Assembly (NCBI RefSeq): GCF_023055435.1
Contig: NW_025963924.1
Span: 8,680,001-8,744,000, forward strand
Direction of reading: 5' to 3'
DNA from: Haliotis rufescens
Lineage: Eukaryota
DNA length: 64,000 nucleotides
In this document: piece after piece, positions 2,884-47,432 of the stretch
How the letters are laid out: each line of letters begins with the position of its first letter
Numbering within the stretch: the stretch's first letter is position 1
Translations under genes and position numbers: made by a program
Notes under the pieces: model-generated
Database searches by the model: none
What the model was told of the DNA's origin: nothing
Seen by the model: only the letters and a program-made list of their open reading frames with translations

Positions 2884-5367
2884 ATGGCAAGTCTACAACC
2901 GTCACGGCTCATATTCAAATGTGTATGCTACATCCTACTGATAGCAATGGTTTATGGTCAGGGTTGTCCCCCTTGCAATTGTACCTACGACCATCATCAA
3001 GTATATGTGAACTGCTCCAACCAGAATCTTACAAGCGTTCCCAAGGGTTTACCAACATCAACCACAATGCTTTTTCTCAATGGAAACAACATAAAGACAA
3101 TAGGACCAAAAACATTTTCAACAATGAGAAATCTTCAATATCTATATATTGAGAGAAACTCTCTTGTTAGCCTACATGAACTGGCCTTTCATGGTCTTGA
3201 CAACCTTGTCAATCTGAGCTTAAAACTCAACGATCTAAAACTAAATTCAAAAACCTACAAAACCAATCTCTTCAAGCCACTACATAAACTTCAGGTTCTT
3301 AACATACAGTTCAATCAGATGACAACATGGCCTGGAGATGACAGTCAACGTATAGCCTACCCTGATGTTTCGTTTCAACATCTGTCTCGACTTACTCACC
3401 TTTACATCGATGGTCGTCCAACAGACTTTGGACCAGGATTTGCCAAACTTTTCAAACTGTCTCTTCTCGCCTTCACGCCATACACTAACTATTGCAAACT
3501 GACTTTACAAAACTCAACCTTTATAAACGTACCCCATGTGGAATATCTCTACATGACCTACTGCCAAATCAGAGATGCAGAACAATTAACATTTTCTCCC
3601 TTTTATCGTATCCATACACTTGACGTGTCACAAAATTGGGAATTGGGATTTCCTGAATTTGCTAAAGCAACGTATGGGCTCCGTGATTCCACCATACAAA
3701 TCCTGAAAATGAACCATATTTCTCCATTATCTGGATCTTGTTATCAACTGCGGAGAAACGATTTTGTTCATTTAAAGAATACCTCACTGCGGGAACTTCA
3801 CCTTTCTGGAAATGGATTCATTGACTTCGAAAAAGGAACCATTTTAAATTTTCCTGAAACTCTCAAGGTGTTGGTGGCCAGATGGAACCGGTTTTACGAA
3901 GGTCCATACATAGAGGAACTGACTCAGGTAAAGTCACTCCAATATCTGGATGTCTCACACCTAAAACTATTAAGACCGACATTTAGCTTTCATAGATATG
4001 ATCCTGTAAGTCATGTGTCGAACGGTGGATTTCCCTTTCCACCAAACCTTCAAGTCTTGAAACTTTCATTCTGTTGCATGGGTTTATACTTCCCCAACAC
4101 TGAAAAGGTGTTGAAAAACGATTTGAGAAGCATCTCTATAAATGGAAACTTGATATCTTTTGTTGGGGGTCCTGTTCGTGGTTTTGAAAAGGTCGAACAT
4201 TTTGATTTCTCTGACAATAAAATGGAGAGGCTCGATTCAAGTTTCTTTACTTTTAGCAATCGTGTGAAATATCTCAACCTTTCAAACAACTTTCTTGGAA
4301 ATATGATAGATAAAGATGACAAGGGTGATACTTTCAGTCAGCTGATTAAATTGACAGATTTGGATATGTCTCGAAACAGAATCAAATACTTACCAAAAGC
4401 TGTTTTTAAAAATCTTACAAATATACATTATCTCAGAATAAATAGCAACAGTATAAGAACAATTGATGCTCAAATCAAACACTTGTCGCATCTTAAATTA
4501 TTCGATGTAAGCCATAACAGCCTCCTCAAAATACCTGTAAACATTCTTCAAGAACTGGACACATTATCACATGTTTCTGTCCGTCTGAGAGGAAACCCAC
4601 TTACTTGCATATGCTCTTCCCTCGAATCCCTTCACTGGATGAACAGACTTGCCGATAACATTGAAGACATGGAATCAATTACGTGTCTTATGAAAAATGG
4701 GAAGATCAATTTTAGAAACCTAGATTCCATAATTACAAGTTTGGAAAAAGAATGCCATTCAAGTGTTCTTACCACTGTCATGACAATGTCTATTACCTTG
4801 ATAATAATGGTCGGAATAGGACTAGGAGCAGGATATCGGCATAGGTGGAAATTGAAATATCTGTACTATGTCGGGAGAAGAAAGTATCGGGAACTGGAGA
4901 ATACTGACCAAGATGACCAGGAGTACCAATATGATGCCTTTGTGTCATATGCAGACACAGACAGATGCTTAGTTATAGAGGGAATGATATCGGAACTGGA
5001 AGACAAAGCAGGACTTCGATTGTGCATTCATCATCGGGACTTTCTTCCAGGGGAGGTTATTGCTTCAAACATTGTCAACGCAATACAGAACAGCCGCAAG
5101 ACCTTGATTGTTTTATCTCCAGCTTTCCTGAAGAGTCACTGGTGTGATTTTGAGTACAACATGGCGCGGATGGAGGGCGTCTCCAGGAGACAGAACATCG
5201 TGCTGGTGGTGCTGTATGAGCCTGTCGACATGAAGGATCTACCTAAGGACATGGCAGTCATGTTGTCCACCAACTGTTACTTGGAGTACAACACAGATGT
5301 CTATGGCAGTGTTGTATTCTGGAACAGTTTACGTGAATCTATTACCACTGTAAATAAAATCGACTGA
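2884..5367 (+). CDS. Toll-like receptor, copy 1 (single cysteine cluster type, uninterrupted CDS)
   Basis: ATG at 2884 matches the paralog starts (the track's 2875 start is a GTG). Signal peptide, LRRNT CPPCNC..VNCS, many LxxLxLxxN repeats, LRRCT NPLTCIC..C..C, TM (VMTMSITLIIMVGIGLGAGY), TIR motifs YDAFVSY, LCIHHRDFLPG, WCDFE and FW. Confidence 0.96.
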   Translation: MASLQPSRLIFKCVCYILLIAMVYGQGCPPCNCTYDHHQVYVNCSNQNLTSVPKGLPTSTTMLFLNGNNIKTIGPKTFSTMRNLQYLYIERNSLVSLHELAFHGLDNLVNLSLKLNDLKLNSKTYKTNLFKPLHKLQVLNIQFNQMTTWPGDDSQRIAYPDVSFQHLSRLTHLYIDGRPTDFGPGFAKLFKLSLLAFTPYTNYCKLTLQNSTFINVPHVEYLYMTYCQIRDAEQLTFSPFYRIHTLDVSQNWELGFPEFAKATYGLRDSTIQILKMNHISPLSGSCYQLRRNDFVHLKNTSLRELHLSGNGFIDFEKGTILNFPETLKVLVARWNRFYEGPYIEELTQVKSLQYLDVSHLKLLRPTFSFHRYDPVSHVSNGGFPFPPNLQVLKLSFCCMGLYFPNTEKVLKNDLRSISINGNLISFVGGPVRGFEKVEHFDFSDNKMERLDSSFFTFSNRVKYLNLSNNFLGNMIDKDDKGDTFSQLIKLTDLDMSRNRIKYLPKAVFKNLTNIHYLRINSNSIRTIDAQIKHLSHLKLFDVSHNSLLKIPVNILQELDTLSHVSVRLRGNPLTCICSSLESLHWMNRLADNIEDMESITCLMKNGKINFRNLDSIITSLEKECHSSVLTTVMTMSITLIIMVGIGLGAGYRHRWKLKYLYYVGRRKYRELENTDQDDQEYQYDAFVSYADTDRCLVIEGMISELEDKAGLRLCIHHRDFLPGEVIASNIVNAIQNSRKTLIVLSPAFLKSHWCDFEYNMARMEGVSRRQNIVLVVLYEPVDMKDLPKDMAVMLSTNCYLEYNTDVYGSVVFWNSLRESITTVNKID

Positions 5368-6379: not shown

Positions 6380-6830
6380 TAGAAACTGCGAGATAGATTT
6401 TCAAAATATAAGAATAAGTATTTTAACCCGTTTGATGCTTCCTGCGATATGTTGTGGAGGGTGTCAACTAACATTCCGAAAACATTCGCCATCATGCTTC
6501 GAATATGAGGCAATATATGAAAAAACAATTCTGGTTTGTGGAAGGATATAACATTTATTAAAACGTTTTCAAAATCACACAAAAATAAGATCTCTTCTTG
6601 TGGAAATCCACGTGAAAATGATATACACGTCTTTCTTGAATGTCCCAAATACACTCATCCCAGAAATATCATGTTCACTAACATTATAACAGCTGGAAGT
6701 ACATGTACAATGCAAAATATTCTCTATGGTAAAGAATCTCTAGCTGAAAGTCACAATTATCACATTTTCAACAACATTCAAAAATATATACTGTCGACTA
6801 AAAGATTGATCATAAATATATGATATTGCT
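6380..6830 (+). mobile_element. LINE ORF2 3' fragment with zinc-knuckle-like motif (copies at about 17060-17390 and 36250-36710)
   Basis: SCGNPxENxIHVFLECPKY..PR motif, broken by stops. Confidence 0.6.
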
Positions 6831-11170: not shown

Positions 11171-13654
11171 ATGGCAAGTCTACAACCGTCACGGCTCATA
11201 TTCAAATTTGTATGCTACATCCTACTGATTGAAATGGTTTATGGTCAGGGTTGTCCCCCTTGTGATTGTACCTACGACCTTCATCAAGTATATGTGAACT
11301 GCTCCAACCGGAATCTTACAAGCGTTCCCAAGGGTTTACCAACATCAACCACAATGCTTTTTCTCAATGAAAACAACTTAAAGACAATAGGACCAAAAGC
11401 ATTTTCAACAATGAGAAATCTTCAATATCTATATCTTGAGAGAAACTCTCTTGTTAGCCTACATGAACTGGCCTTTCATGGTCTTGACAACCTCGTCAAT
11501 CTGAGCTTAAAACTCAACGATCTAAAACTAAATTCAAAAACCTACAAAACCAATCTCTTCAAGCCACTACATAAACTTCAGGTTCTTAACATACAGTTCA
11601 ATCAGATGACAACATGGCCTGGAGATGACAGTCAACGTATAGCCTACCCTGATGTTTCGTTTCAACATCTGTCTCAACTTACTCACCTTTACATCGATGG
11701 TCGTCCAACAGACTTTGGACCAGGATTTGCCAAACTTATCAAACTTTCTCTTCTCGCCTTCACGCCATACACTAACTATTGCAAATTGACTTTACAAAAC
11801 TCAACCTTTATAAACGTACCCCATGTGGAATATCTCTACATGACCGCCTGCCAAATCCGTGAGGTGGAATCCTTAACATTTTCTTCTTTTTATCGTATCC
11901 ATACAATTGACGTGTCACAAAATTGGGAATTGGGATTTCATGAATTTGGCAAGGCAACGTATGGACTCCGTGATTCCTCCATACAAATTCTGAAAATGAA
12001 CCATATTTCTCCATTATCTGGATCATGTTATCAACTGCGGAGAAACGATTTTGTTCATTTAAAGAATACCTCACTGCGGGAACTTCACATTTCTGACAAT
12101 GGACTCATTGACTTCGAAAAAGGAACCATGCTGAACTTACCTGAAACTCTAGAGATGCTGGTGGCCAGAAGGAATAGGTTTTACCTTGGTCCATACTTGT
12201 TAGAAATGTCTCAAGCAAAGTCACTCCGAATTCTGGATATCTCACACATGGAAATATTGGAGAGTACAGACGTCAGACAAGATAACCCTTCCAGTCGTGT
12301 GTCAGCACCCAGTAATTACCCTTTTCCACCAAACCTTCAAGTCTTGAAATTATCATTCTGTTGCCTGAAATATAGAATCTTTGGCGGTGATGTGATGAAA
12401 AACGATTTGAGAAGCATTTCCCTGAACGGTAATTTGTTTACTTCTGTAAGGGGACAGGTCTATGGTTTTGAAAACGTTGAACATTTTGATTTCTCTGACA
12501 ATATCTTGGAGTGGCTCGATTCAAGTTTCTTTGCTATTGACAATCGTGTGAAACATCTCAACCTTTCAAACAACTTTCTTGGAAATATGATAGATGAAGA
12601 TGACAAGGGTGATACTTTTAGTCAACTGGTTAACTTGACAGATTTGGATATATCTCAAAACAGAATCAATTACTTACCAAAGGCTGTTTTTAGAAATCTT
12701 ACAAATATACAATATCTCAGAATTAATAACAACAGTATAAGAACAATTGATGCTCAAATCAAACACTTGTCGCATCTTAAATTATTTGACGTAAGCCATA
12801 ATGGCCTCCTCAAAATGCCTGTAAACATTCTTCAAGAACTGGACACATTATCACATGTTTCTGTCCGCCTGAGAGGAAACCCACTTACCTGCATATGCTC
12901 TTCCCTCGAATCCCTTCGCTGGATGAACAGACTTGCTGATAACATCGAAGACATGGAATCAATGACGTGTCTTATGAAAAATGGGAAGATGAACAATTTG
13001 AGAAACCTAGATTCCATAATTATCAATTTGGATAAAGAATGCCGTTCAAGTGGTCTTACTACTGTCATGACAATGTCTATTCTCTTGATAATAATGGTCG
13101 GAATAGGATTAGGTGCAGGATATCGTCATAGGTGGAAATTGAAATATCTGTACTATGTCGGGAGAAGAAAGTATCGGGAACTGGAGAATACTGACCAAGA
13201 TGACCAGGAGTACCAATATGATGCCTTTGTGTCATATGCAGACACAGACAGATGCTTGGTTATAGAGGGAATGATATCGGAACTGGAAGACAAAGCTGGA
13301 CTTCGATTGTGCATTCATCATCGGGACTTTCTTCCAGGGGAGGTTATTGCTTCAAACATTGTCAACGCAATACAGAACAGCCGCAAGACCTTGATTGTTC
13401 TGTCTCCAGCTTTCCTGAAGAGTCACTGGTGTGATTTTGAGTACAACATGGCGCGGATGGAGGGCGTCTCCAGGAGACAGAACATCGTGCTGGTGGTGCT
13501 GTATGAGCCTGTTGACATGAAGGATCTACCTAAGGACATGGCAGTCATGTTGTCCACCAACTGTTACTTGGAGTACAACACAGATGTCTATGGCAGTGTT
13601 GTATTCTGGAACAGTTTACGTGAATCTATTACCACTGTTAACAAAGTCGACTAA
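11171..13654 (+). CDS. Toll-like receptor, copy 2
   Basis: 827 aa ORF with the same LRR-TM-TIR architecture; TIR essentially identical to copy 1. Confidence 0.96.
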   Translation: MASLQPSRLIFKFVCYILLIEMVYGQGCPPCDCTYDLHQVYVNCSNRNLTSVPKGLPTSTTMLFLNENNLKTIGPKAFSTMRNLQYLYLERNSLVSLHELAFHGLDNLVNLSLKLNDLKLNSKTYKTNLFKPLHKLQVLNIQFNQMTTWPGDDSQRIAYPDVSFQHLSQLTHLYIDGRPTDFGPGFAKLIKLSLLAFTPYTNYCKLTLQNSTFINVPHVEYLYMTACQIREVESLTFSSFYRIHTIDVSQNWELGFHEFGKATYGLRDSSIQILKMNHISPLSGSCYQLRRNDFVHLKNTSLRELHISDNGLIDFEKGTMLNLPETLEMLVARRNRFYLGPYLLEMSQAKSLRILDISHMEILESTDVRQDNPSSRVSAPSNYPFPPNLQVLKLSFCCLKYRIFGGDVMKNDLRSISLNGNLFTSVRGQVYGFENVEHFDFSDNILEWLDSSFFAIDNRVKHLNLSNNFLGNMIDEDDKGDTFSQLVNLTDLDISQNRINYLPKAVFRNLTNIQYLRINNNSIRTIDAQIKHLSHLKLFDVSHNGLLKMPVNILQELDTLSHVSVRLRGNPLTCICSSLESLRWMNRLADNIEDMESMTCLMKNGKMNNLRNLDSIIINLDKECRSSGLTTVMTMSILLIIMVGIGLGAGYRHRWKLKYLYYVGRRKYRELENTDQDDQEYQYDAFVSYADTDRCLVIEGMISELEDKAGLRLCIHHRDFLPGEVIASNIVNAIQNSRKTLIVLSPAFLKSHWCDFEYNMARMEGVSRRQNIVLVVLYEPVDMKDLPKDMAVMLSTNCYLEYNTDVYGSVVFWNSLRESITTVNKVD

Positions 13655-14592: not shown

Positions 14593-14601
14593 CCATCATC
14601 C

Positions 14602-15448: not shown

Positions 15449-15459
15449 CAAGCAAATGT

Positions 15460-16700: not shown

Positions 16701-16711
16701 CTTTCTTATGA

Positions 16712-29342: not shown

Positions 29343-29485
29343 NNNNNNNNNNNNNNNNNNNNNNNNNNNNNNNNNNNNNNNNNNNNNNNNNNNNNNNNNN
29401 NNNNNNNNNNNNNNNNNNNNNNNNNNNNNNNNNNNNNNNNNNNNNNNNNNNNNNNNNNNNNNNNNNNNNNNNNNNNNNNNNNNNN
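29343..29485. other. Assembly gap
   Basis: Run of N. Confidence 1.
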
Positions 29486-32400: not shown

Positions 32401-32747
32401 AACTTCTCTTTAAAGGACTTCTGTTCCGACATACTATATCTGGGCATTTTCTTTAATCCAAGTTTATGCAAACATGATGTATTTCATTCCTTATGTTGGA
32501 CCATGGCGACCCATCAATGTAATTCGATGTAATTCACCTCCCTTAACTTGGCCATAATCCACAAGCAGATATTACCAGATAAGCAACGATTATGAATCTA
32601 GTTCAACAAACTGACAGTGGTTACATCTGAATTAAAACATCCCATCAACATATCTTTTCAGAACATATAAAACATCAACGTTAGAGAATGAACAGTTTCG
32701 AATTTCTGCCAAATCAGATTCCATAGGGCGTCACAGCTACTACAACA

Positions 32748-35231
32748 ATGGCAAGTCTACAACCGTCACGGCTCATATTCAAATGTGTATGCTACATCCT
32801 ACTGATAGCAATGGTTTATGGTCAGGGTTGTCCCCCTTGCAATTGTACCTACGACCATCATCAAGTATATGTGAACTGCTCCAACCAGAATCTTACAAGC
32901 GTTCCCAAGGGTTTACCAACATCAACCACAATGCTATTTCTCAATGGAAACAACATAAAGACAATAGGACCAAAAGCATTTTCAACAATGAAAAATCTTC
33001 AATATCTATATATTGAGAGAAACTCTCTTGTTAGCCTACATGAACTGGCCTTTCATGGTCTTAACAACCTCGTCAATCTGAGCTTAAAACTCAACGACCT
33101 CAAACTAAATTCAAAAACCTACAAAACCAATCTCTTCAAGCCACTACATAAACTTCAGGTTCTTAACATACAGTTCAATCAGATGACAACATGGCCTGGA
33201 GATGACAGTCAACGTATAGCCTACCCTGATGCCTCGTTTCAACATCTGTCTCGACTTACTCACCTTTACATCGATGGTCGTCCAACAGACTTTGGACCAG
33301 GATTTGCCAAACTTTTCAAGCTTTCTCTTCTCGCCTTCACGCCATACACTAACTATTGCAAACTGACTTTACAAAACTCAACCTTTATAAACGTACCCAA
33401 TGTGGAATATCTCTACATGACCTACTGCCAAATCAGAGAAGCAGAACCATTAACATTTTCTCCTTTTTATCGTATCCATACACTTGACGTGTCACAAAAT
33501 TGGGAATTGGGATTTCCTGAATTTGCTAAAGCAACGTATGGGCTCCGTGATTCCTCCATACAAATCCTGAAAATGAACGGTATTTCTCCATTATCTGGAT
33601 CTTGTTATCAACTGCGGACAAACGATTTTGTTCACTTAAAGGATACCTCACTGCGAGAACTTCACATTTCTGGCAATGGACTCATTGACTTCGAAAAAGG
33701 AACCATTTTGAACTTACCTGAAACTCTAGAGATGCTGGTGGCCAGATGGAATAGGTTTTACCTTGGTCAATACTTGTTGGAAATGTCTCAAACAAAGTCA
33801 CTCCGAATTCTGGATATCTCACACATGAAAGCATTGAGGAGTACAGACGTCAGACAATATAACCCTTCCACTCATGTGTCAGTACCCAGTATTTTCCCTT
33901 TTCCACCAAACCTTCAAGTCTTGAAATTATCATTCTGTTGCCTGAAATTAAGCTTCATTGGTGGTGATCTGATGAAAAACGATTTGAGAAGCATTTCTCT
34001 GAATGGTAATTTGATTACTTCTGTAAGGGGACAGTCCCATGGTTTTGAAAACGTTGAATATTTTGATTTCTCGAACAATATCTTGGAGTGGCTCGATTCA
34101 AATTTCTATGGTATTGACAATCGTGTGAAATATCTCAACCTTTCCAAAAACTTTCTTGGAAATATGATAGATGAGGATGACAAGGGTAATTCTTTCAGTC
34201 AACTGGTTAACTTGACAGATTTGGATATATCTCAAAACAGAATCAAATACTTACCAAAGGCTATTTTTAGAAATCTTACAAATATACAATATCTCAGAAT
34301 TAATAACAACAGTATAAGAACTATTGATGCTCAAATCAAACACTTGTCGCATCTTAAATTATTTGACGTAAGCCATAATGGCCTCCTCAAAATGCCTGTA
34401 AACATTCTTCAAGAACTGGACACATTATCACAGGTTTCTGTCCGTCTGAGGGGAAACCCACTTACCTGCATATGCTCTTCCCTCGAATCCCTTCGCTGGA
34501 TGAACAGACTTGCTGATAACATCGAAGATATGGAATCAATTACGTGTCTTATGAAAAATGGGAAGATGAACAATTTGAGAAACCTAGATTCCATTATTAT
34601 CAATTTGGATAAAGGATGCCGTTCAAGTGGTCTTACTACTGTCATGACAATGTCTATTCTCTTGATAATAATGGTCGGAATAGGATTAGGAGCAGGGTAT
34701 CGTCATAGGTGGAAACTGAAATACCTGTACTATGTCGGGAGAAGAAAGTATCGGGAACTGGAGAATACTGACCAAGATGACCAGGAGTACCAATATGATG
34801 CCTTTGTGTCATATGCAGACACAGACAGATGCTTGGTTATAGAGGGAATGATATCGGAACTGGAAGACAAAGCTGGACTTCGATTGTGCATTCATCATCG
34901 GGACTTTCTTCCAGGGGAGGTTATTGCTTCAAACATTGTCAACGCAATACAGAACAGCCGCAAGACCTTGATTGTTCTGTCTCCAGCTTTCCTGAAGAGT
35001 CACTGGTGTGATTTTGAGTACAACATGGCGCGGATGGAGGGCGTCTCCAGGAGACAGAACATTGTGCTGGTGGTGCTGTATGAGCCTGTTGACATGAAGG
35101 ATCTACCCAAGGACATGGCAGTCATGTTGTCCACCAACTGTTACTTGGAGTACAACACAGATGTGTATGGCAGTGTTGTATTCTGGGACAGTTTATGTGA
35201 ATCTATTACCACTGTTAATAAAATCGACTGA
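32748..35231 (+). CDS. Toll-like receptor, copy 4
   Basis: 827 aa ORF, LRR-TM-TIR; C-terminus reads FWDSLCE instead of FWNSLRE. Confidence 0.96.
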   Translation: MASLQPSRLIFKCVCYILLIAMVYGQGCPPCNCTYDHHQVYVNCSNQNLTSVPKGLPTSTTMLFLNGNNIKTIGPKAFSTMKNLQYLYIERNSLVSLHELAFHGLNNLVNLSLKLNDLKLNSKTYKTNLFKPLHKLQVLNIQFNQMTTWPGDDSQRIAYPDASFQHLSRLTHLYIDGRPTDFGPGFAKLFKLSLLAFTPYTNYCKLTLQNSTFINVPNVEYLYMTYCQIREAEPLTFSPFYRIHTLDVSQNWELGFPEFAKATYGLRDSSIQILKMNGISPLSGSCYQLRTNDFVHLKDTSLRELHISGNGLIDFEKGTILNLPETLEMLVARWNRFYLGQYLLEMSQTKSLRILDISHMKALRSTDVRQYNPSTHVSVPSIFPFPPNLQVLKLSFCCLKLSFIGGDLMKNDLRSISLNGNLITSVRGQSHGFENVEYFDFSNNILEWLDSNFYGIDNRVKYLNLSKNFLGNMIDEDDKGNSFSQLVNLTDLDISQNRIKYLPKAIFRNLTNIQYLRINNNSIRTIDAQIKHLSHLKLFDVSHNGLLKMPVNILQELDTLSQVSVRLRGNPLTCICSSLESLRWMNRLADNIEDMESITCLMKNGKMNNLRNLDSIIINLDKGCRSSGLTTVMTMSILLIIMVGIGLGAGYRHRWKLKYLYYVGRRKYRELENTDQDDQEYQYDAFVSYADTDRCLVIEGMISELEDKAGLRLCIHHRDFLPGEVIASNIVNAIQNSRKTLIVLSPAFLKSHWCDFEYNMARMEGVSRRQNIVLVVLYEPVDMKDLPKDMAVMLSTNCYLEYNTDVYGSVVFWDSLCESITTVNKID

Positions 35232-36977
35232 AACACAGCAGATATAACTCCTTGATTGAATATAGATATAGCCATATATTTATGGTGTGCCAAGGCAGTT
35301 TATATAGTGTTCAAATACATCACGATCTATACTGTGACACCTTCTTAAAATAAAGAGCTTTTTTACCACAGATGAAAGTGTTGTCGATCCCTGTCTATGT
35401 ATTAACTTGCAGCTTCTAATTCGGTGCATGTGTTTCCTTGTAGATTTGGTCCGCCACTATGCTTTTAGTGTTCGATACTGCACCAAACTGTAATACAGGT
35501 TACTTGCAATGAGAAAACACAGCTATTTATATATTATTTTTTTTATGAATTATGTTATGCATATTTGCGATATTATAACTATGAGTATTAATAATGTTTT
35601 AAATAAACTTTGTGTACAACTATTATTAAACAGATATTATTCTTCCATACAATGTATGCTGAGTTTATTATTTGTCCCTGGCGAAGGATGCAAAACAATC
35701 ATTGTAGTTCACACACATTGCAGATGATATCGTTCATTGTTGTTAGAAAATAAATACAAACAAAATCTGTAATTCTTCATGACAGCGGCTCTCATCCATT
35801 CAACACAAAAGAACCATTCACTGCATCCTACGCCTTTGTGTACGATCGAGTTATTCTGTAAACATAACACAACAGTTCAAAAACTAACTTTAAAATCTTA
35901 AGAACTGACCTTGAGGGAACCTGGAACTTTTGTACTAAACAGAAGTATTTCTGTGTGTGCTTCAATACATACACCCATTTTCACTGAAAGAAAGAACTAA
36001 ACAATTATATTTTTTGTCATTCTTTTGTAAAATCCGAGGCATAACTAATTTGTTTTAATTGAAATGAACTTTGACACACCCTTGTACCTTGGAGGTGTAG
36101 TTAAAGGTCAAAGGTCAAAGAGCAGCACCTGCTTCCGAGTGTGAAATCGGTTTGTCGCTTGGATTTTGATGAAAGAACCTGGAGTTCTCTTATTGCATAA
36201 ATAATAGTCAAAGTCTGTGACTCATACAAGTGTATTTTACGGTAGTTTCGCATGACTACATCCTGATCTAGAAACTGCGAAATAGATTTACAAAATATAA
36301 GAATAAGTATTTTAACCCGTTTGATGCTTCCTGCGACATGTTGTGGAGGGTGTCAACTAACATTCCCAAAACATTCGCCATCATGCTTCGAATATGAGGC
36401 AATATCCAAAAAAAATTCTGATTTGTGGAAAGGATATAACATTTATTAAAACGTTTTCAAAATCACACAAAAATAAGATCTCTTCTTGTGGAAATCCATG
36501 TGAAAATAATATACACGTCTTTCTTGAATGTCCCAAATACACTCGTCCCAGAAATATCATGTTCACTAACATTATAACAGCTGGAAGTACATGTACAATG
36601 CAAAATATTCTCTATGGTAATGAATCTCTAGCTGATAGTCACAATAATCACATTTTCAACAACATTCAAAAATATATACTGTCGACTTAAAGAATTATCA
36701 TAAATATATGATATTGCTCTGCGACCACTTACTATTTGTTACGACATAAGTGTAAAAACCTTATCTCTAAAAGTATTAATGACAGTGTATATTACGTTAT
36801 GTGGGCCGAGTGCAGGGGCTCCGGTACTCCAAGTATCCAATGCACGATGTTGATTACCGCCTGATGACGTCATTGTAGTCTGCCGGATCTTGCCCTGACC
36901 TGTGTTCTGTCAGCCTATGACGTTCAAACAGTCTGGCGATGGTTGCACGTGTACAGTTGAAGTTCTTGCAATCTGGG

Positions 36978-37125
36978 NNNNNNNNNNNNNNNNNNNNNNN
37001 NNNNNNNNNNNNNNNNNNNNNNNNNNNNNNNNNNNNNNNNNNNNNNNNNNNNNNNNNNNNNNNNNNNNNNNNNNNNNNNNNNNNNNNNNNNNNNNNNNNN
37101 NNNNNNNNNNNNNNNNNNNNNNNNN
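36978..37125. other. Assembly gap
   Basis: Run of N. Confidence 1.
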
Positions 37126-37582: not shown

Positions 37583-37617
<35 letters not shown>

Positions 37618-38701: not shown

Positions 38702-41700
38702 TTAAGTTTCTCTTAGCCGTTGGACTTTATATAGATATAAACATGTGTTATATACAACATCAAAGTTTTCTGATGAAATAATTTCAGTAAAAGATGTTAC
38801 AGTTTGAAACTTGATATACTGTTTAAGATACATATTTCTTAGGGCTGAATAACGCTCACATACAAGTAAAACATGAAATTCATCTTCAATAAAAGGTATA
38901 CCATTGTCTATACAATATTTACATAAGCGTTCAGTGTATGGGACATTTGTGTATCTCCCCAAGTCAATTGCAAGTTTAAACTTGCTACATCTGAAACGAG
39001 TCATACATATTCTCAGATGTACTGGTATGGGGAGTGTAAGATATTTTTCTACATTCAACAGGGATTTAAAATGTTTATAATAAAAAGTATCAGATATACT
39101 ATTGATAGAACTACACCATGATTGTTGAAGGTTATCAAATAATCTTTGCTTAAAAAGATGAATAAATACCTTCACATTGCCAACATCTTGTGTTAACCAT
39201 ACATATCCAAAACCTAATTTAAACAAAATATTCTTAATGTGAGTAGCCCATGTGGTGCGACCAGAATGGTCCAGTGATTTGAGCATTAAATAACATTGGC
39301 GAGGCAGTCTGCGCTCGTCCAAACGCAGTAGCCTGCACCAATACTTGATGGCCCTTGTGGTATACACAAGTTGGAGAGGGGCTCTTCCGCACTCTCCTAA
39401 AACCATTGCATTGTTTGTTGTTTTACCTGTATTTAGAAACCATTTACACATTTTGTTCTGTACATCTTCAATAATTTTACAATATGAGATGCCCCATATT
39501 TCTGCGCCGTAACAGACAATAGGCACAATCATAGCATCAAATATCTTAAATAAATCTTGACAGGGTATATTACCAACTTTCTTTTGATATCTATATAATG
39601 TCATAATGGCCTTGTTACTCTGTGCAGCAAGAGTATTTAGTGCCTTAGTCCAAACAAGTTTGGGCGTGAACACAATACCCAAATATCTATAAAACGACAC
39701 GGTTTCAATATATACACTATTAAATTTCCATTTTTCATAATGTCTAAGGGGTCCACCATTTCTGAATACCATAACTTTGGTTTTCTTCAAGTTTACCTTC
39801 ATGCCTGTGGTATTGCAAAAATGTTCCAAGGCATTGATCTTCTTTTGTAAATTTAATGGTTCATCAGCAATAGATGACACGTCATCAGCAAACATAAGTG
39901 CATATATTGCTGGGCAGTCTTTAGTAATAAAGACAGTTTGTCCTCCATAATTTTCCATAAAATTTACAAGTTTATTTATGAATATTAAAAACATCTGAGG
40001 GCTGAGGATGCATCCTTGACGGGTACCTATATTACACTTAAAGTATTTGGATAACCCAGTAGGTGTTCTAACACAGGCACACAGTTTATTGTACATTGAT
40101 GTAATAATAGACAGAAACTTTCCGCAGACACCAATATCAGCCAAACTCTGTAACAACATATTGTGATCAACATTATCAAAAGCTTTTGAGAAATCTACAA
40201 ATAAGCAGTAGAACCTTCCTTTCTTTTTACATGCATACTTTTGGATAATGGCCTGTAGTGAAAATATATGATCTGTCGTGGAATAGTTGGGTCTAAATCC
40301 AGCTTGAGATTCGTCAATGATATTGTTATCATCACACCACCTCTGTAGTCTAGCATTAAGAATAGATGTAAATACTTTGCATATGGTATCAATGAGTGAT
40401 ATACCTCTATAATTGTTGGCATCATTCATATCACCAGACTTGAACAGAGGACAGATGATACTTTTCCCCCACACATCTGGAAAGTTACCACTCTCAAAGA
40501 TTTTGTTAAATGTAACAACTAAAATTGGTGTAATTTGTTTCTCTGAAGACTTTAAAAATTCAGCAGCAATACCATCAGGCCCAGGGGATTTATTATTCCC
40601 AAGCTGTTTTATTTGACTTGATATTTCTTCTGCTAGAATAGGAATGTTAATTGTTAGATCATTATTGTCAGGGATATGGTACATACTGCTATCAAGTGCA
40701 AGATCCTGTCTAAAAAGAAGAGACATAAAATGGTTAGTCCATTGCTCAGTATTAATTGATTGAGTGACTGCATTAAATGGTTTACTATCCTTGAGCAGTT
40801 TCCAGAACAACTTTGGGTTGTCTCTTGCAGCTATCAGTTTTTCTCTCTGTGCTTCAAGAAATGAGTTTTTCTTTCTACTAAAAGCATTTTTAAACACTGA
40901 TCTTAAGTGTCTAAAAAGTGAAAAATCTTCCCCATGATCTCTGTGAGCTCTCAGGGCTTTGTATTTGTCATGTTTAATTAATTCAAGTTCATCATCCCAC
41001 CAGGGAGGCTGCTGATTTCTCCTGAAGTTAGAATTTAAACCATATACTTTTTTGGTGTGTTCTGCAGCTTCTTGATAATAACTGACTAAACAAGATACTG
41101 CTGTATTACAATTATTATTAGCTAGTTGTAAAATATAATCATAATGCTCTACTAATATACCCTCAAGCTTGTGCAAGAAGGTTTCTTTAGCACCTTCATT
41201 CCACACATATTTCTCCCAACTGCCTCCACCTTCCTTTTCCAGATTACAGTTGGAGTTACTCCTTGTATTACCTGGGGCTGGGGGTTGACTATATTTACCA
41301 GATGAGGTACCCTGAATATTGAGTGAGCAATATAAGGGGAAGTGATTGGAGTGATCCTGTGTACCAACCCCAAAGTTAGAGAAATATGGAAAGAGAGAAG
41401 AGGAGGCAATCATGTAATCCACAGCACTTGATCCATTATGAGTGAAACATGTGAATTCACCATTTGTATCATTAAACAATCTCCCATTCAATGTGTGAAT
41501 ACCAAAGGTCCTACACAATTCAACAAGTCTTTTGCCAAAATTATTATGTGTCACTGAGTCTCTGTTTTTTCTTGGCATATCAAATGTATCAGAGGGATAA
41601 TCATCAACATCTCTCTGAATAAAGTCAATATTGTCATCCGGGATATAGTCAAGGAAGTCCTTTGTCCTTGCATTAAGATCACCAGCAAGAAATATATGCT

Positions 41701-42172
41701 TGTGTGGGTGTTCCCCAACAATAATGTTCAAGTAGTTTTCAAGATGAGTAAATCCATCACTATCTATATTCTCATTAACTGGTGAATTTTCGGGTGAGAT
41801 ATAAGTAAATATCAAAACACAGTCAGAGTCCCATGATAAACTTGATGTTTTGAATAAAAGTACAACAGTATTTTCAAAATTATCATAAAGCCTACATAAC
41901 AGTCCACTATCTAGCCAATGAGAGCGTATCAAAACAGTGATACCACCACTATATAGCCCGAACGTGTGTGTCTTGGGACGGACACAGTTTAGCGCACGAA
42001 AACCTGACAAGAAGTCCGAGAATTCATCGGACCGTCTCACAAATGACTCACAAAACGCGATCAAGTCAAAATGTTCACAAAGACTTTTTACCTGAGATGT
42101 CGAGTTTTCATATTTTCGCAGTCCTTCTATATTCCACGAGAGAATATCAAATGTTGGGCCGTGGCCGTCACA
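38702..42172 (-). CDS. LINE ORF2: APE endonuclease, reverse transcriptase and C-terminal zinc-binding motif
   Basis: The frame stays open up to 42172 (CDGHGPTFDILSWNIEGL...). EN motifs SWNIEGL, GDLNAR, VDY, DHSNH. RT motifs KSPGPDGI, YRGISL, QAGFR, FVDFSKAFD, GTRQGCILSP, FADD, YLG. C-terminal CKYC..EDEFH..C. Confidence 0.93.
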   Translation of the reverse strand, partial: CDGHGPTFDILSWNIEGLRKYENSTSQVKSLCEHFDLIAFCESFVRRSDEFSDFLSGFRALNCVRPKTHTFGLYSGGITVLIRSHWLDSGLLCRLYDNFENTVVLLFKTSSLSWDSDCVLIFTYISPENSPVNENIDSDGFTHLENYLNIIVGEHPHKHIFLAGDLNARTKDFLDYIPDDNIDFIQRDVDDYPSDTFDMPRKNRDSVTHNNFGKRLVELCRTFGIHTLNGRLFNDTNGEFTCFTHNGSSAVDYMIASSSLFPYFSNFGVGTQDHSNHFPLYCSLNIQGTSSGKYSQPPAPGNTRSNSNCNLEKEGGGSWEKYVWNEGAKETFLHKLEGILVEHYDYILQLANNNCNTAVSCLVSYYQEAAEHTKKVYGLNSNFRRNQQPPWWDDELELIKHDKYKALRAHRDHGEDFSLFRHLRSVFKNAFSRKKNSFLEAQREKLIAARDNPKLFWKLLKDSKPFNAVTQSINTEQWTNHFMSLLFRQDLALDSSMYHIPDNNDLTINIPILAEEISSQIKQLGNNKSPGPDGIAAEFLKSSEKQITPILVVTFNKIFESGNFPDVWGKSIICPLFKSGDMNDANNYRGISLIDTICKVFTSILNARLQRWCDDNNIIDESQAGFRPNYSTTDHIFSLQAIIQKYACKKKGRFYCLFVDFSKAFDNVDHNMLLQSLADIGVCGKFLSIITSMYNKLCACVRTPTGLSKYFKCNIGTRQGCILSPQMFLIFINKLVNFMENYGGQTVFITKDCPAIYALMFADDVSSIADEPLNLQKKINALEHFCNTTGMKVNLKKTKVMVFRNGGPLRHYEKWKFNSVYIETVSFYRYLGIVFTPKLVWTKALNTLAAQSNKAIMTLYRYQKKVGNIPCQDLFKIFDAMIVPIVCYGAEIWGISYCKIIEDVQNKMCKWFLNTGKTTNNAMVLGECGRAPLQLVYTTRAIKYWCRLLRLDERRLPRQCYLMLKSLDHSGRTTWATHIKNILFKLGFGYVWLTQDVGNVKVFIHLFKQRLFDNLQQSWCSSINSISDTFYYKHFKSLLNVEKYLTLPIPVHLRICMTRFRCSKFKLAIDLGRYTNVPYTERLCKYCIDNGIPFIEDEFHVLLVCERYSALRNMYLKQYIKFQTVTSFTEIISSENFDVVYNTCLYLYKVQRLRET

Positions 42173-44948: not shown

Positions 44949-47432
44949 ATGGCAAGTCTACAACCGTCACGGCTCATATTCAAATGTGTATGCTACATCC
45001 TACTGATAGCAATCGTTTATGGTCAGGGTTGTCCCCCTTGCAATTGTACCTACGACCATCATCAAGTATATGTGAACTGCTCCAACCGGAATCTTACAAG
45101 CGTTCCCAAGGGTTTACCAACATCAACCACAATGCTATTTCTCAATGGAAACAACATAAAGACAATAGGACCAAAAGCATTTTCAACAATGAGAAATCTT
45201 CAATATCTATATATTGAGAGAAACTCTCTTGTTAGCCTACATGAATTGGCCTTTCATGGTCTTGACAACCTCGTCAATCTGAGCTTAAAACTCAACGACC
45301 TCAAACTAAATTCAAAAACCTACAAAACCAATCTCTTCAAGCCACTACATAAACTTCAGGTTCTTAACATACAGTTCAATCAGATGACAACATGGCCTGG
45401 AGATGACAGTCAACGTATAGCCTACCCTGATGCCTCGTTTCAACATCTGTCTCGACTTACTCACCTTTACATCGATGGTCGTCCAACAGACTTTGGACCA
45501 GGATTTGCCAAACTTTTCAAGCTTTCTCTTCTCGCCTTCACGCCATACACTAACTATTGCAAACTGACTTTACAAAACTCAACCTTTATAAACGTACCCA
45601 ATGTGGAATATCTCTACATGACCTACTGCCAAATCAGAGAAGCAGAACCATTAACATTTTCTCCTTTTTATCGTATCCATACACTTGACGTGTCACAAAA
45701 TTGGGAATTGGGATTTCCTGAATTTGCTAAAGCAACGTATGGGCTCCGTGATTCCTCCATACAAATCCTGAAAATGAACGGTATTTCTCCATTATCTGGA
45801 TCTTGTTATCAACTGCGGAGAAACGATTTTGTTCACTTAAAGAATACCTCACTGCGGGAACTTCACATTTCTGGCAATGGACTCATTGACTTCGAAAAAG
45901 GAACCATTTTGAACTTACCTGAAACTCTACAGATGCTGGTGGCCAGATGGAATAGGTTTTACCTTGGTCAATACTTGTTGGAAATGTCTCAAGGAAAGTC
46001 ACTCCGAATTCTGGATATCTCACACATGAAAGGATTGGCGAGTAGAGACGTCAGACAAGATAACCCTTCCACTCATGTGTCAGTACCCAGTATGTTCCCT
46101 TTTCCACCAAACCTTCAAGTCTTAAAATTATCATTCTGTAGCCTGAAATTAAGCCTCACTGGTGATTATCTGATGAAAAACGATTTGAGAAGCATTACTC
46201 TGAATGGTAATTTGATTGATTGTGTTATGGGACAGACTCATGGTTTTGAAAACGTTGAACATTTTGATTTCTCAAACAATATCTTGGAGTGGCACGATTC
46301 AAGTTTCTATGGTATTGACAATCGTGTGAAATATCTCAACCTTTCCAGAAACTTTCTTGGAAATATGATAGATGAAGATGACAAGGGTAATACTTTCAGT
46401 CAACTGGTTAACTTGACAGATTTGGATATATCTCAAAACAGAATCAAATACTTACCAAAGGCTATTTTTAGAAATCTTACAAATATACAATATCTCAGAA
46501 TTAATAACAACAGTATAAGAACAATTGATGCTCAAATCAAACACTTGTCGCATCTTAAATTATTTGACGTAAGCCATAATGGCCTCCTCAAAATGCCTGT
46601 AAACATTCTTCAAGAACTGGACACATTATCACATGTTTCTGTCCGTCTGAGAGGAAACCCACTTACCTGCATATGCTCTTCCCTCGAATCCCTTCGCTGG
46701 ATGAACAGACTTGCTGATAACATCGAAGACATGGAATCAATTACGTGTATAATGAAAAATGGGAAGATCAACAATTTGAAAAACCTAGATTCCATAATTA
46801 TCAATTTGGATAAAGAATGCCGTTCAAGTGGTCTTACTACTGTCATGACAATGTCTATTCTCTTGATAATAATGGTCGGAATAGGATTAGGAGCAGGGTA
46901 TCGTCATAGGTGGAAACTGAAATACCTGTACTATGTCGGGAGAAGAAAGTATCGGGAACTGGAGAATACTGACCAAGATGACCAGGAGTACCAATATGAT
47001 GCCTTTGTGTCATATGCAGACACAGACAGATGCTTGGTTATAGAGGGAATGATATCGGAACTGGAAGACAAAGCTGGACTTCGATTGTGCATTCATCATC
47101 GGGACTTTCTTCCAGGGGAGGTTATTGCTTCAAACATTGTCAACGCAATACAGAACAGCCGCAAAACCTTGATTGTTTTGTCTCCCGCTTTCCTGAAGAG
47201 TCACTGGTGTGATTTTGAGTACAACATGGCGCGGATGGAGGGTGTCTCCAGGAGACAGAACATCGTGCTGGTGGTGCTGTATGAGCCTGTTGACATGAAG
47301 GATCTACCCAAGGACATGGCAGTCATGTTGTCCACCAACTGTTACTTGGAGTACAACACAGATGTGTATGGCAGTGTTGTATTCTGGAACAGTTTACGTG
47401 AATCTATTACCACTGTTAATAAAATCGACTGA
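44949..47432 (+). CDS. Toll-like receptor, copy 5
   Basis: 827 aa ORF, LRR-TM-TIR; closest to copy 4. Confidence 0.96.
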   Translation: MASLQPSRLIFKCVCYILLIAIVYGQGCPPCNCTYDHHQVYVNCSNRNLTSVPKGLPTSTTMLFLNGNNIKTIGPKAFSTMRNLQYLYIERNSLVSLHELAFHGLDNLVNLSLKLNDLKLNSKTYKTNLFKPLHKLQVLNIQFNQMTTWPGDDSQRIAYPDASFQHLSRLTHLYIDGRPTDFGPGFAKLFKLSLLAFTPYTNYCKLTLQNSTFINVPNVEYLYMTYCQIREAEPLTFSPFYRIHTLDVSQNWELGFPEFAKATYGLRDSSIQILKMNGISPLSGSCYQLRRNDFVHLKNTSLRELHISGNGLIDFEKGTILNLPETLQMLVARWNRFYLGQYLLEMSQGKSLRILDISHMKGLASRDVRQDNPSTHVSVPSMFPFPPNLQVLKLSFCSLKLSLTGDYLMKNDLRSITLNGNLIDCVMGQTHGFENVEHFDFSNNILEWHDSSFYGIDNRVKYLNLSRNFLGNMIDEDDKGNTFSQLVNLTDLDISQNRIKYLPKAIFRNLTNIQYLRINNNSIRTIDAQIKHLSHLKLFDVSHNGLLKMPVNILQELDTLSHVSVRLRGNPLTCICSSLESLRWMNRLADNIEDMESITCIMKNGKINNLKNLDSIIINLDKECRSSGLTTVMTMSILLIIMVGIGLGAGYRHRWKLKYLYYVGRRKYRELENTDQDDQEYQYDAFVSYADTDRCLVIEGMISELEDKAGLRLCIHHRDFLPGEVIASNIVNAIQNSRKTLIVLSPAFLKSHWCDFEYNMARMEGVSRRQNIVLVVLYEPVDMKDLPKDMAVMLSTNCYLEYNTDVYGSVVFWNSLRESITTVNKID

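What the first reader, a model, noticed from the sequence alone, without database searches (positions are those of the whole stretch)
2884..47432. Five-gene TLR array with constant-variable-constant architecture
Seen: five intact paralogs. The TIR is identical at protein level apart from the penultimate I/V and two residues in copy 4. The first ~220 aa are nearly identical, but aa ~225-470 diverge strongly. Known: the TIR BB-loop Pro (RDFLPG) fits MyD88-type signalling, and lineage-specific TLR expansions occur in molluscs. Inference: this is a diversifying receptor family in which one homogenised signalling module is coupled to variable recognition surfaces.
Basis: partly seen in the sequence, partly recalled or inferred. 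Interest (0 to 1): 0.8.

Follow-up and report, generated by a model that had tools for sequence, protein, structure and literature searches.

The report
Abalone Toll-like receptor array, mosaic evolution
Five neighbouring Toll-like receptor genes of an abalone keep both ends alike, by copying DNA between copies at the front and by strict selection on the signalling end, while a central stretch around a floppy loop differs strongly; this is an ordinary kind of immune-gene evolution, apparently not yet described for mollusc TLRs.

Summary
The window carries five intact single-exon-CDS TLR genes (T1-T5) in tandem, and both N gaps are intergenic.

The constant-variable-constant profile is real but has three causes:
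- **N-terminal ~230 codons:** homogenised by gene conversion. dS is 0.007-0.06, against 0.27 divergence in T1's upstream flank. T1 is 97-98% identical to T3-T5 here but 93% to its H. cracherodii orthologue.
- **TIR:** held by purifying selection (omega about 0.05, silent differences present). T1's 3' half was also homogenised in the past.
- **Centre (columns 331-470):** partly ancient. T1 groups with its H. cracherodii orthologue and dS is 0.55-0.62. Among T2-T5 it is partly fast-evolving (omega 1.0-1.9).

A home-made M1a/M2a test is significant only when a disordered, indel-rich loop (columns 357-392) is included. Variation is not enriched on the concave LRR face.

RNA-like contigs cover only the transcribed unit, show a conserved 5'UTR intron, and carry marker letters of at least three copy types.

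Other TLR clusters in this genome show mosaic dS too, and the scan noted gene conversion in another TLR cluster of this genome (s1-811095).

Verdict: a new member of a known kind (compare TLR1/TLR6 conversion and bivalve TLR expansions). Interest is moderate.

The parts
2884..5367 (+). T1 coding sequence (827 aa), A-lineage copy; the whole CDS lies in exon 2
   Evidence: groups with H. cracherodii P0126 in the centre
11171..13654 (+). T2 coding sequence (827 aa), B lineage
22435..24888 (+). T3 coding sequence (817 aa), B lineage, with two in-frame deletions (8 aa in the loop, 3 aa further on)
32748..35231 (+). T4 coding sequence (827 aa); sits on a 7.5-kb island between the two N gaps
44949..47432 (+). 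T5 coding sequence (827 aa)
2782..3573 (+). Homogenised 5' tract of T1. It starts about 30 nt before the exon-2 acceptor and runs to about codon 230; it is 0.7-4.7% diverged from the other copies, against 22-23% uncorrected (JC 0.27-0.28) in T1's upstream flank. Homologous tracts: 11171-11860, 22435-23124, 32748-33437, 44949-45638.
3874..4290 (+). Variable core of T1 (alignment columns 331-470, LRR11-16). Homologous cores: 12161-12574, 23425-23808, 33738-34151, 45939-46352.
3952..4056 (+). Indel-rich, low-confidence insertion loop between two LRR strands in T1 (columns 357-392). Homologues: 12239-12343, 23503-23586, 33816-33920, 46017-46121. It carries most of the omega>1 signal.
4930..5364 (+). 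TIR-coding part of T1. Homologues: 13217-13651, 24451-24885, 34794-35228, 46995-47429. Contains the RDFLPG BB-loop motif.
31694..32661 (+). 5'UTR intron of T4 (GTAAGT...TTTTCAG, 968 nt), seen as a joint in a contig of run X3. Donor and acceptor are conserved in all five copies (T1 about 1497 / 2811; T2 about 9895 / 11084; T3 about 21172 / 22348; T5 about 43661 / 44862).
35232..35614 (+). 3'UTR of T4 as far as RNA-like contigs reach
   Evidence: tables 2 and 8
29343..29485 (.). Assembly gap in the T3-T4 spacer (intergenic)
36978..37125 (.). Assembly gap in the T4-T5 spacer (intergenic, 1.7 kb past the T4 stop)
38702..42064 (-). Non-LTR retrotransposon ORF (endonuclease + reverse transcriptase, 1120 aa) inserted in the T4-T5 spacer. 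It is not part of the receptor genes but explains the longer spacer.

Best explanation
This is a tandem array of five expressed, single-cysteine-cluster Toll-like receptor genes of an abalone. It evolves as a mosaic.

Shown: an old duplication gave an A lineage (T1) and a B lineage (T2-T5). Both are also present in Haliotis cracherodii. The B unit (about 10-12 kb) was then duplicated to four copies. Non-reciprocal exchange (gene conversion) between copies has recently homogenised the start of exon 2 (about the first 690 nt, LRRNT to LRR6) across all five genes. Earlier it also homogenised T1's 3' half, including the TIR and about 900 nt of 3' flank. The TIR is in addition under strong purifying selection. 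The central LRR11-16 segment has escaped homogenisation and keeps lineage-specific sequence.

Inferred: among the young B copies this centre, above all a disordered insertion loop, accumulates amino-acid changes at or above the neutral rate. I read this as diversification of a ligand- or partner-contacting part (about 50% likely) rather than mere relaxation. The outcome is a set of receptors with one signalling output and one N-terminal frame but different central modules.
For: **Gene family.** Pfam LRR and TIR domains. The AF2 model has pLDDT 83.3 with 20 LRR strands, a transmembrane helix and a TIR. Foldseek hits TLR5/8/13/4/2 at E down to 7e-22. The nearest named proteins are Haliotis 'toll-like receptor 4'.

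**Conversion of the N-terminal tract.**
- dS is 0.007-0.063 in codons 1-220, against 0.27-0.34 (T1 against the others) in 221-470 and 0.55-0.62 in the core. Fisher p=1.4e-9.
- T1's upstream non-coding DNA is JC 0.27-0.28 diverged, but CDS nt 88-690 is only 0.7-4.7% diverged.
- Over 1-220, T1 is 97.3-97.7% identical to T3-T5 (95.0% to T2) but 93.2% to its orthologue HcraA. HcraA and HcraB are 92.3% identical to each other.
- AU tests: the centre rejects monophyly of the window's copies (p=6e-65). The N-terminus rejects a (T1,HcraA) clade (p=0.04) and accepts a T1-T5 clade (p=0.50).
- In the run-length test, 4 of 10 pairs have p<0.01.

**Old A/B lineages.** (T1,HcraA) has support 100/99 in the central tree. 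At 22 of the 44 T1-versus-rest residues, HcraA shares T1's state and HcraB shares the other state.

**TIR.** N:S is 4:11, omega about 0.1. M0 omega is 0.053.

**Centre.**
- Omega is 1.02-1.86 in 6 of 6 B-copy pairs.
- Young-branch N:S is 29:5 in the centre against 44:33 elsewhere (p=0.0045).
- M2a against M1a gives LRT 21.3 (0 of 19 null simulations reach it), and 16.0 with T1 dropped.

**Expression.** Three RNA-like runs cover only exon 2 plus UTRs. One contig carries a GT..AG joint. Marker letters of T1-, T2/T3- and T5-type are present.

**Generality.** There is a similar dS mosaic in cluster C2 (0.06 | 0.41-0.49 | 0.02), and other mosaics in C24 and C35.
Against: - 'Paralogues closer than orthologues' therefore rests on proteins only.
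- The N-terminal tree is an unresolved star and the AU rejection is marginal (p=0.04). The direction of conversion is unknown.
- The positive-selection signal falls to LRT 5.6 (p=0.06) and 5.1 (p=0.08) once the loop is removed. 2 of 19 null replicates reach 5.6, and one reached 10.3, so the test is somewhat liberal.
- The site test uses five sequences, a single tree in a recombining family, and my own code, not codeml.
- Simple counts do not show omega>1: 29:5 gives p=0.26 one-sided.
- On the old T1 branch the centre is under purifying selection (41:21, omega 0.51, p=0.018).
- Concave-face positions are not enriched for change.
- The runs are only guessed to be RNA, are contigs from other individuals, and give no expression levels.
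- T4-private letters were seen in none of the 4 runs at 13 of 13 listed places.
- T4 lies between two gaps.
Confidence: 0.75

Rival explanations
1. Conversion plus neutral drift. The ends are homogenised and constrained as described, but the centre is variable only because it is weakly constrained (a floppy loop and convex or lateral residues). Once it had diverged it no longer served as a substrate for conversion. No adaptive diversification of recognition is involved.
For: M0 omega is 0.92 in codons 301-470 and is not different from 1 (p=0.70). Without the loop, M2a is not significant. The loop is predicted disordered (pLDDT <50 at 363-381). The concave face is not enriched. N:S of 29:5 is not above neutral (p=0.26).
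Against: M2a against M1a is significant with the loop (LRT 21.3) and in the B lineage alone (16.0). Within the B lineage the loop aligns without gaps except for T3's deletion. Sites carry 3-4 different residues among four young copies while silent change is near zero (loop N:S is 11:0 for T2-T4 and 6:0 for T4-T5). All five ORFs are intact. The old branch shows constraint (omega 0.51), so the centre is functional.
Confidence: 0.35
2. Selection only. The three-part profile reflects different strengths of purifying and positive selection on duplicates of one age, with no sequence exchange between copies.
For: The TIR profile alone (dN near 0, dS above 0) would fit this.
Against: Silent-site and non-coding divergence differ 10- to 30-fold along the same gene pair. 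For T1 against the others, dS is 0.02-0.06 in the N-terminus, 0.55-0.62 in the core and 0.27 in the upstream flank. N-terminal protein divergence between species (6-9%) is as high as in the centre of orthologues (9-12%), so the N-terminus is not specially constrained. The segment trees are incongruent.
Confidence: 0.04
3. Assembly artefact. Some of the five copies (especially T4, which lies between two gaps) are alternative haplotypes or mis-joined pieces, and the mosaics are assembly chimeras.
For: Two gaps flank T4. T4-private letters are absent from all four runs laid. T2-T5 flanks differ by only 3-4%.
Against: - The units have different spacers and a LINE insertion. T4's 3' flank is T1-like while T5's is T2/T3-like.
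- A- and B-type proteins both exist in H. cracherodii.
- Marker letters of T1-, T2/T3- and T5-type occur together in single runs.
- The dS mosaic also occurs in gap-free copies (T1, T2) and in other clusters.
Confidence: 0.08

Closest known systems
Gene conversion between tandem mammalian TLR1 and TLR6 (Kruithof et al. 2007, PMC2077338; abstract read)
   Same: These are tandem TLR paralogues in which one block is more alike between paralogues than between orthologues because of repeated conversion, while another part stays divergent. The converted block there includes the TIR.
   Different: There the converted block is C-terminal (LRR16-19 to TIR) and the N-terminus is orthologue-like. Here the most recent conversion tract is N-terminal (first ~230 codons), the C-terminal half shows older homogenisation, and the refractory part is central. 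There are five copies rather than two, and the animal is a mollusc.
Lineage-specific tandem TLR expansions of bivalves (Saco et al. 2023, PMC10279657; passages read)
   Same: Tandem duplicates of one subfamily, stronger negative selection on the TIR, and episodic positive selection and higher variability in the ectodomain.
   Different: That paper does not use the term 'gene conversion' (0 occurrences). Here much of the profile comes from sequence exchange and from retained old lineages, and the animal is a gastropod. Its supplements were not seen and may list Haliotis genes.
Gene-conversion patches in another TLR cluster of this same genome (scan note s1-811095)
   Same: Same genome, same process: blocks kept nearly identical among otherwise diverged TLR paralogues.
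   Different: A different chromosome piece and different genes, and one partner there is said to lack a TIR. I did not re-examine that locus. I tested clusters C2, C24, C35, C588, C13, C583 and C1 myself.
Plant NLR/LRR resistance-gene clusters and lamprey VLRs (recalled, no call)
   Same: LRR receptors in which exchange between copies and diversification act on part of the repeat array.
   Different: In those systems variation concentrates on the concave beta-face x positions. Here it does not (17 of 100 against 96 of 403). There is also no evidence of somatic assembly.
Vertebrate TLR4 (the name NCBI gives the Haliotis relatives)
   Same: LRR ectodomain, transmembrane helix, and a TIR with a BB-loop proline.
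   Different: There is no sign of orthology. The best vertebrate sequence hits are named TLR13, TLR2, TLR1 and TLR3 at 23-27% identity, and the fold hits are spread over TLR5/8/13/4/2. The name is only a label.

Membership tests
Toll-like receptor (single-cysteine-cluster type) | LRR ectodomain forming a horseshoe solenoid | tested here: met
   Pfam LRR_8 113 bits and LRR_4 79 bits. The AF2 model has 20 LRR strands. Foldseek hits TLR ectodomains at E down to 6.7e-22.
Toll-like receptor (single-cysteine-cluster type) | N-terminal and C-terminal cysteine caps, with no internal cap pair | tested here: inconclusive
   LRRNT scores 23.7 bits, just under the cutoff of 25.8. No LRRCT model matched, although conserved Cys at 575, 577, 601 and 624 are invariant or nearly so. 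No internal cap was found by Pfam.
Toll-like receptor (single-cysteine-cluster type) | Single transmembrane helix between ectodomain and TIR | tested here: met
   The model has a long helix at 610-652 that includes the hydrophobic stretch. No dedicated TM predictor was run.
Toll-like receptor (single-cysteine-cluster type) | Cytoplasmic TIR domain with a BB-loop RDxxPG | tested here: met
   PF01582 scores 63.9 bits against a cutoff of 21.3. RDFLPG is present in all five copies.
Toll-like receptor (single-cysteine-cluster type) | Signals through a MyD88-type adaptor | not tested
   No search for MyD88 was run in this genome. A review passage cites 12 MyD88-like genes in H. rufescens (PMC12521104).
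Vertebrate TLR4 orthologue | Closest vertebrate relatives are TLR4 | tested here: not met
   The best vertebrate hits are named TLR13, TLR2, TLR1 and TLR3. The fold hits are not TLR4-specific.
Concerted evolution by gene conversion | Paralogues within a species are more alike than orthologues in the tract, and the reverse holds outside it | tested here: met
   N-terminus: T1 against T3-T5 is 97.3-97.7% (T2 95.0%), against 93.2% to HcraA. Centre: T1-HcraA is 87.9%, against 59-63% to T2-T5. Proteins only.
Concerted evolution by gene conversion | Silent-site divergence in the tract is far below that of flanking neutral DNA | tested here: met
   dS is 0.02-0.06 against an upstream JC of 0.27 and a core dS of 0.55-0.62 for T1 against the others. 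Fisher p=1.4e-9.
Concerted evolution by gene conversion | Significant phylogenetic incongruence between segments | tested here: met
   AU: the centre rejects a T1-T5 clade (p=6e-65); the N-terminus rejects (T1,HcraA) at p=0.04, which is marginal.
Concerted evolution by gene conversion | Runs of shared sites longer than chance (Sawyer-type test) | tested here: met
   4 of 10 pairs have p<0.01. 2 of 10 survive a Bonferroni threshold of 0.005 (T1-T3 0.0005, T2-T3 0.0015).
Diversifying (positive) selection on a recognition surface | A class of sites with omega significantly above 1 | tested here: inconclusive
   Own-code M2a against M1a: LRT 21.3 for codons 301-470 and 16.0 with T1 dropped, but 5.6 and 5.1 without the loop. 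In the null simulation 0 of 19 replicates reach 21.3 and 2 of 19 reach 5.6. codeml and MEME were not available.
Diversifying (positive) selection on a recognition surface | Changes concentrated on solvent-exposed concave LRR positions (x of xxLxLxx) | tested here: not met
   17 of 100 concave positions vary, against 96 of 403 in the rest of the ectodomain (Fisher p=0.18). pN/pS is 0.3-0.5. Only motif position 8 stands out (9 of 20 LRRs).
Diversifying (positive) selection on a recognition surface | Variable part contacts ligand or co-receptor | not testable with these tools
   No ligand is known. Binding or domain-swap experiments are needed.

The most novel reading that the evidence does not exclude
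Abalone TLR arrays evolve as 'constant frame plus protected cassette'. Array-wide gene conversion keeps the N-terminal frame and the signalling half uniform. A central LRR11-16 cassette, centred on a disordered, indel-prone insertion loop, is shielded from conversion and maintained as long-lived specificity lineages (A, B, and a T4/T5 type) that are shared across species and positively selected. A similar constant-variable-constant dS profile in a second, unrelated cluster (C2) would make this a general design principle of mollusc TLR diversification, with the loop rather than the concave face as the specificity determinant.
Probability: 0.2. Interest if true: 0.6.

Novelty: new member of a known kind. 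Interest (0 to 1): 0.4.

Why it matters
Mollusc TLR families are greatly expanded, and their variability is usually read as positive selection on duplicated ectodomains. This array shows that much of the domain-wise profile can come from gene conversion and from old lineages that escaped it.

This matters for any dN/dS-based claim on such families, because recombination inflates site tests. It also matters for orthology assignment in abalone immunogenetics, for example in marker work for disease resistance in aquaculture.

The array also points to one concrete, testable candidate for a specificity determinant: a 35-residue loop between two LRRs.

Tried and rejected
- **Genomic context in other Haliotis.** I fell back on five proteins from three named species.
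- **Classical R-gene signature.** Enrichment of change on the concave x positions was tested and rejected.
- **Pairwise and branch-count tests for omega>1 in the centre.** None was significant.
- **Retrocopy origin of T1's sharp homology boundary.** Rejected. The 5'UTR intron and its splice sites are conserved in T1, and T1's upstream region is an old homologue (76% identity) of the others'.
- **T4 as an allele of T5 or of T1.** Rejected as a simple reading. T4's 5' flank is B-type and its 3' flank is T1-type.
- **The first-stage note that T4/T5 are chimeras of copy 1 and copies 2/3.** Only partly borne out. At 7 of the 18 T1T4T5-versus-T2T3 residues both H. cracherodii proteins share the T1/T4/T5 state (T2/T3-derived changes). 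At 4 of 18 they share the T2/T3 state.
- **TLR4 orthology.** Rejected.
- **Literature.** Searches (listings only), plus term look-ups in PMC10279657, PMC10903818 and PMC12521104, found no report of gene conversion in mollusc TLR genes. In PMC10903818 the term refers to FREP3. The 2023 abalone TLR survey cited by the review (its reference 29) was not seen, and no supplements were seen. They may already list these five genes.
- **Not run.** MyD88 search, a TM predictor, and codeml/MEME/GARD/GENECONV (not installed).
Full report
**What is there.** The window holds five open reading frames on the + strand (T1 2884-5367, T2 11171-13654, T3 22435-24888, T4 32748-35231, T5 44949-47432). tblastn with T1 finds these five places and no fragments. 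In the whole 1.33-Gb assembly they are the only places at 88-100% identity, and the next relatives (contigs C24, C2) are at 39-44%. T1 has LRR_8, LRR_4 and TIR domains above Pfam's cutoffs, and an LRRNT just below its cutoff. An AlphaFold2 model (mean pLDDT 83.3, pTM 0.65) shows 20 LRR strands, a long membrane helix and a TIR fold. Foldseek matches TLR5, TLR8, TLR13, TLR4 and TLR2 structures.

The nearest named proteins are 'toll-like receptor 4' of Haliotis cracherodii (87% to T1 for the cluster representative), H. rubra (76%) and H. asinina (75%). The genome is therefore an abalone; no call gave the species. The TLR4 label is nominal, because the best vertebrate hits are named TLR13, TLR2, TLR1 and TLR3.

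**Gaps.** Both N runs (29343-29485, 36978-37125) are intergenic, so no frame crosses them. On either side the spacer is colinear with the gap-free T1-T2 spacer. T4 sits on a 7.5-kb island between the two gaps, so its position and the copy number depend on the scaffold.

**Gene structure and expression.** I laid 5,901 letters around T4 on four coded runs. Three runs guessed to be RNA (X1 and X3 of organism A, X5 of organism B; two studies) have contigs only from about 32661 to about 35614. They have zero depth in bins 31197-32575, except 0.98 in X3 at the exon-1 bin, and zero depth in bins 35728-36318. The DNA-like run X15 covers 30 of 30 bins.

One X3 contig joins 31692/3 to 32661/2 across 968 nt with GT..AG ends. 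This is an intron in the 5'UTR. Its donor (GTAAGT) and acceptor (TTTTCAG) are conserved in all five copies, T1 included.

All 34 'other letters' listed inside the CDS equal the letter of at least one other window paralogue (40 rows were shown, 6 outside the CDS were dropped, and 340 were not shown):
- T5-private letters at 5 places: X1 has all 5 and X5 has 3.
- T2/T3-type letters at 4 places, plus one T2-only place.
- T1-private letters at 3 places.

So at least three sequence types are present in transcript-like contigs. T4's private letters were read in none of the four runs at 13 of 13 listed places. These are contigs of other individuals, so this shows neither absence nor expression level.

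**The profile.** Protein identity among the five copies is as follows:

| Residues | Identity |
|---|---|
| 1-220 | 93.6-98.2% |
| 221-330 | 85-99% |
| 331-470 | 59-63% (T1 against the rest); 73-93% (among T2-T5) |
| 471-640 | 86-97% |
| 641-827 (TM and TIR) | 98.4-100% |

**Why the N-terminus is constant.**
- Silent divergence is very low there (dS 0.007-0.063).
- T1's upstream non-coding DNA differs from the other units by JC 0.27-0.28, and its exon-2 5'UTR by 0.35-0.39.
- The nucleotide divergence of T1 from the others drops to 0.7-4.7% over CDS nt 88-690, from 12.5-16% in the window spanning the start codon and 14-33% further upstream. It rises to 25-33% at nt 990-1290.
- Silent differences for T1-T2 are 5 of 149 sites in the N-terminus against 44 of 159 in 221-470 (Fisher p=1.4e-9).
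- Between species the N-terminus is not especially conserved. T1-HcraA is 93.2%, T2-HcraB 90.9% and HcraA-HcraB 92.3%, yet T1 is 97.3-97.7% identical to T3-T5.
- AU tests reject a (T1,HcraA) clade for the N-terminus (p=0.040, marginal) and do not reject a clade of the five window copies (p=0.50). For 331-470 a clade of the five copies is rejected (p=6e-65), and T1 pairs with HcraA at 100/99 support.
- A run-length permutation test gives p<0.01 for 4 of 10 pairs.

This is concerted evolution by gene conversion. Its 5' boundary lies near the start of exon 2 (homology from 2782; acceptor at 2811).

**Why the TIR is constant.** Silent differences are present (dS 0.04-0.14) while dN is 0-0.009. Branch counts are 4 N to 11 S (omega about 0.1, p=2e-5). 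M0 omega is 0.053 and is rejected against 1 at p=7e-12. Across species the TIR is 98-99% identical to H. cracherodii and 88-91% to H. rubra and H. asinina.

Purifying selection therefore suffices for T2-T5, whose TIR dS equals that of their flanks (0.03-0.09). For T1 against the rest, TIR dS (0.09-0.14) and 3'-flank divergence (0.03-0.065) are far below the core (0.55-0.62) and the 5' flank (0.27). The 3' half was thus homogenised too, but earlier (Fisher TIR against middle p=3e-5).

**Why the centre is variable.** There are two layers.

First, old lineages. At 22 of the 44 residues where T1 differs from the other four, HcraA shares T1's state and HcraB shares the other state. 10 of the 44 are T1-private. 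On this old branch N:S is 41:21 (omega 0.51, p=0.018), which is constraint.

Second, fast change among the young copies.
- In core columns 331-440, dS among T2-T5 is 0.03-0.16, close to their flanks, but omega is 1.02-1.86 in 6 of 6 (non-independent) pairs.
- Young-branch N:S is 29:5 in 331-470 against 44:33 in the rest of the gene (Fisher p=0.0045). 29:5 is not itself above neutrality (p=0.26).

My own implementation of GY94 site models on the tree (T1,(T2,T3),(T4,T5)) gives the following:

| Data set | LRT, M2a against M1a | chi-square p |
|---|---|---|
| Codons 301-470 | 21.3 (10.5% of sites at omega 6.8) | 2.4e-5 |
| Codons 301-470, T1 dropped | 16.0 | 3e-4 |
| Codons 301-470, loop columns 357-392 removed | 5.6 | 0.06 |
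| Same, T1 dropped and loop removed | 5.1 | 0.08 |
| Codons 1-220 | 0.35 | 0.84 |
| Codons 471-640 | 0 | 1 |
| Codons 641-829 | 0 | 1 |

In 19 data sets simulated under the fitted M1a, none reached 21.3, two reached 5.6 and one reached 10.3. The chi-square p is therefore somewhat liberal. Recombination, five sequences and multi-nucleotide changes can all inflate such tests.

**Where the changes lie.**
- The loop (T1 residues 357-390) varies at 23 of 34 positions. It holds the indels (T3 lacks 8 residues) and is modelled with pLDDT below 50 at 363-381.
- Concave-face x positions vary at 17 of 100, framework positions at 10 of 80, and the rest of the ectodomain at 96 of 403 (Fisher p=0.18). pN/pS at concave positions is 0.3-0.5.
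- Only motif position 8 stands out (9 of 20 LRRs). This was also noted by the first stage (s1-805584). It is a post hoc observation.

**History.** H. cracherodii has one protein of each type in the 90% clusters (P0126 with T1; P0002 with T2-T5), H. rubra has two close copies and H. asinina has one. The A/B split therefore predates the split from H. cracherodii. In the centre, T2/T3 pair with HcraB (82/88) and T4/T5 form their own clade (96/95). A T2-T5 clade is not rejected (p=0.19). T2-T5 units share about 2.1 kb of upstream DNA at 94-96%. A non-LTR retrotransposon with an intact 1120-aa ORF sits in the T4-T5 spacer.

**Generality.** In other TLR clusters of the same assembly, dS is also mosaic:
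- C2 pair: 0.06 | 0.41-0.49 | 0.02-0.14. This is a similar constant-variable-constant profile (bin 6 of 8 is intermediate, 0.34), with unalignable flanks.
- C24: 0.11-0.21 in the first quarter against more than 1.2 in the last five of eight bins.
- C35: 1.2 at the N-terminus against 0.01-0.1 in the last five of eight bins.
- C13 and C583 clusters: uniformly young.

A follow-up note of this scan on another piece of the genome reports conversion patches in TLR genes (s1-811095). I did not re-examine that locus.

**Comparison with what is known.** Conversion that limits divergence of a block of tandem TLR paralogues is established for mammalian TLR1/TLR6 (PMC2077338, abstract). Tandem TLR expansion in bivalves, with negative selection on the TIR and episodic positive selection on the ectodomain, is in print (PMC10279657, passages). 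That paper and a 2025 review (PMC12521104, passages) do not mention gene conversion. The review cites 29, 33 and 16 TLR genes for three abalones from a 2023 survey that I did not see. My four searches (listings only) found no report of conversion in mollusc TLRs.

**Verdict.** The genes are ordinary members of an expanded mollusc TLR subfamily. The added value is the mechanism behind the profile and a defined candidate specificity loop. Interest 0.4; new member of a known kind.

Noticed in passing
window 38702-42064 (- strand): An intact 1120-aa ORF of a non-LTR retrotransposon (Exo_endo_phos plus RVT_1) is inserted in the T4-T5 spacer. It accounts for the longest spacer in the array.
   Followed up: partly
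window 29486-36977: T4 lies on a 7.5-kb island between two assembly gaps. At 13 of 13 listed places where T4 alone differs from the other four copies, none of the 4 runs laid (3 RNA-like, 1 DNA-like, from other individuals) reads T4's letter. This could be copy-number variation, a private haplotype, or a limitation of contigs.
   Followed up: partly
T1 residues 67, 226, 278, 309, 334, 444, 468, 497, 521: Position 8 of the LxxLxLxxN motif varies in 9 of 20 LRRs, against 0-5 of 20 for every other motif position. These sites are spread over the constant and variable parts alike.
   Followed up: partly
window 31694-32661 and homologues in T1, T2, T3, T5: A 5'UTR intron with a conserved donor and acceptor. 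The genes therefore have a non-coding exon 1 about 1 kb (1.3 kb in T1) upstream of the coding exon.
   Followed up: yes
G000 contigs C2 (L008, L011), C24 (L006, L007, L032), C35 (L025-L028), C588 (L013-L015): Other tandem TLR clusters of the same genome also show block-wise dS mosaics. C2 repeats a similar constant-variable-constant profile, with a TIR dS of 0.02 and unalignable flanks.
   Followed up: partly
window 35020-35130: A joint skipping 109 nt (CA..TG) is seen in X1, X3 and the DNA-like X15, with loose ends at 34962 and 35170 in X3. It most likely comes from contigs of another TIR-containing paralogue and is not a splice.
   Followed up: no
window 31000-31196 and 36484-36712: Very high summed contig depth in all runs (3136 and 312 in X15), with many loose ends. 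These are dispersed repeats in the spacers.
   Followed up: no
alignment columns 32, 299, 490, 522: N-x-S/T sequons differ between copies (8 to 10 per ectodomain), so glycan positions differ slightly among the paralogues.
   Followed up: no
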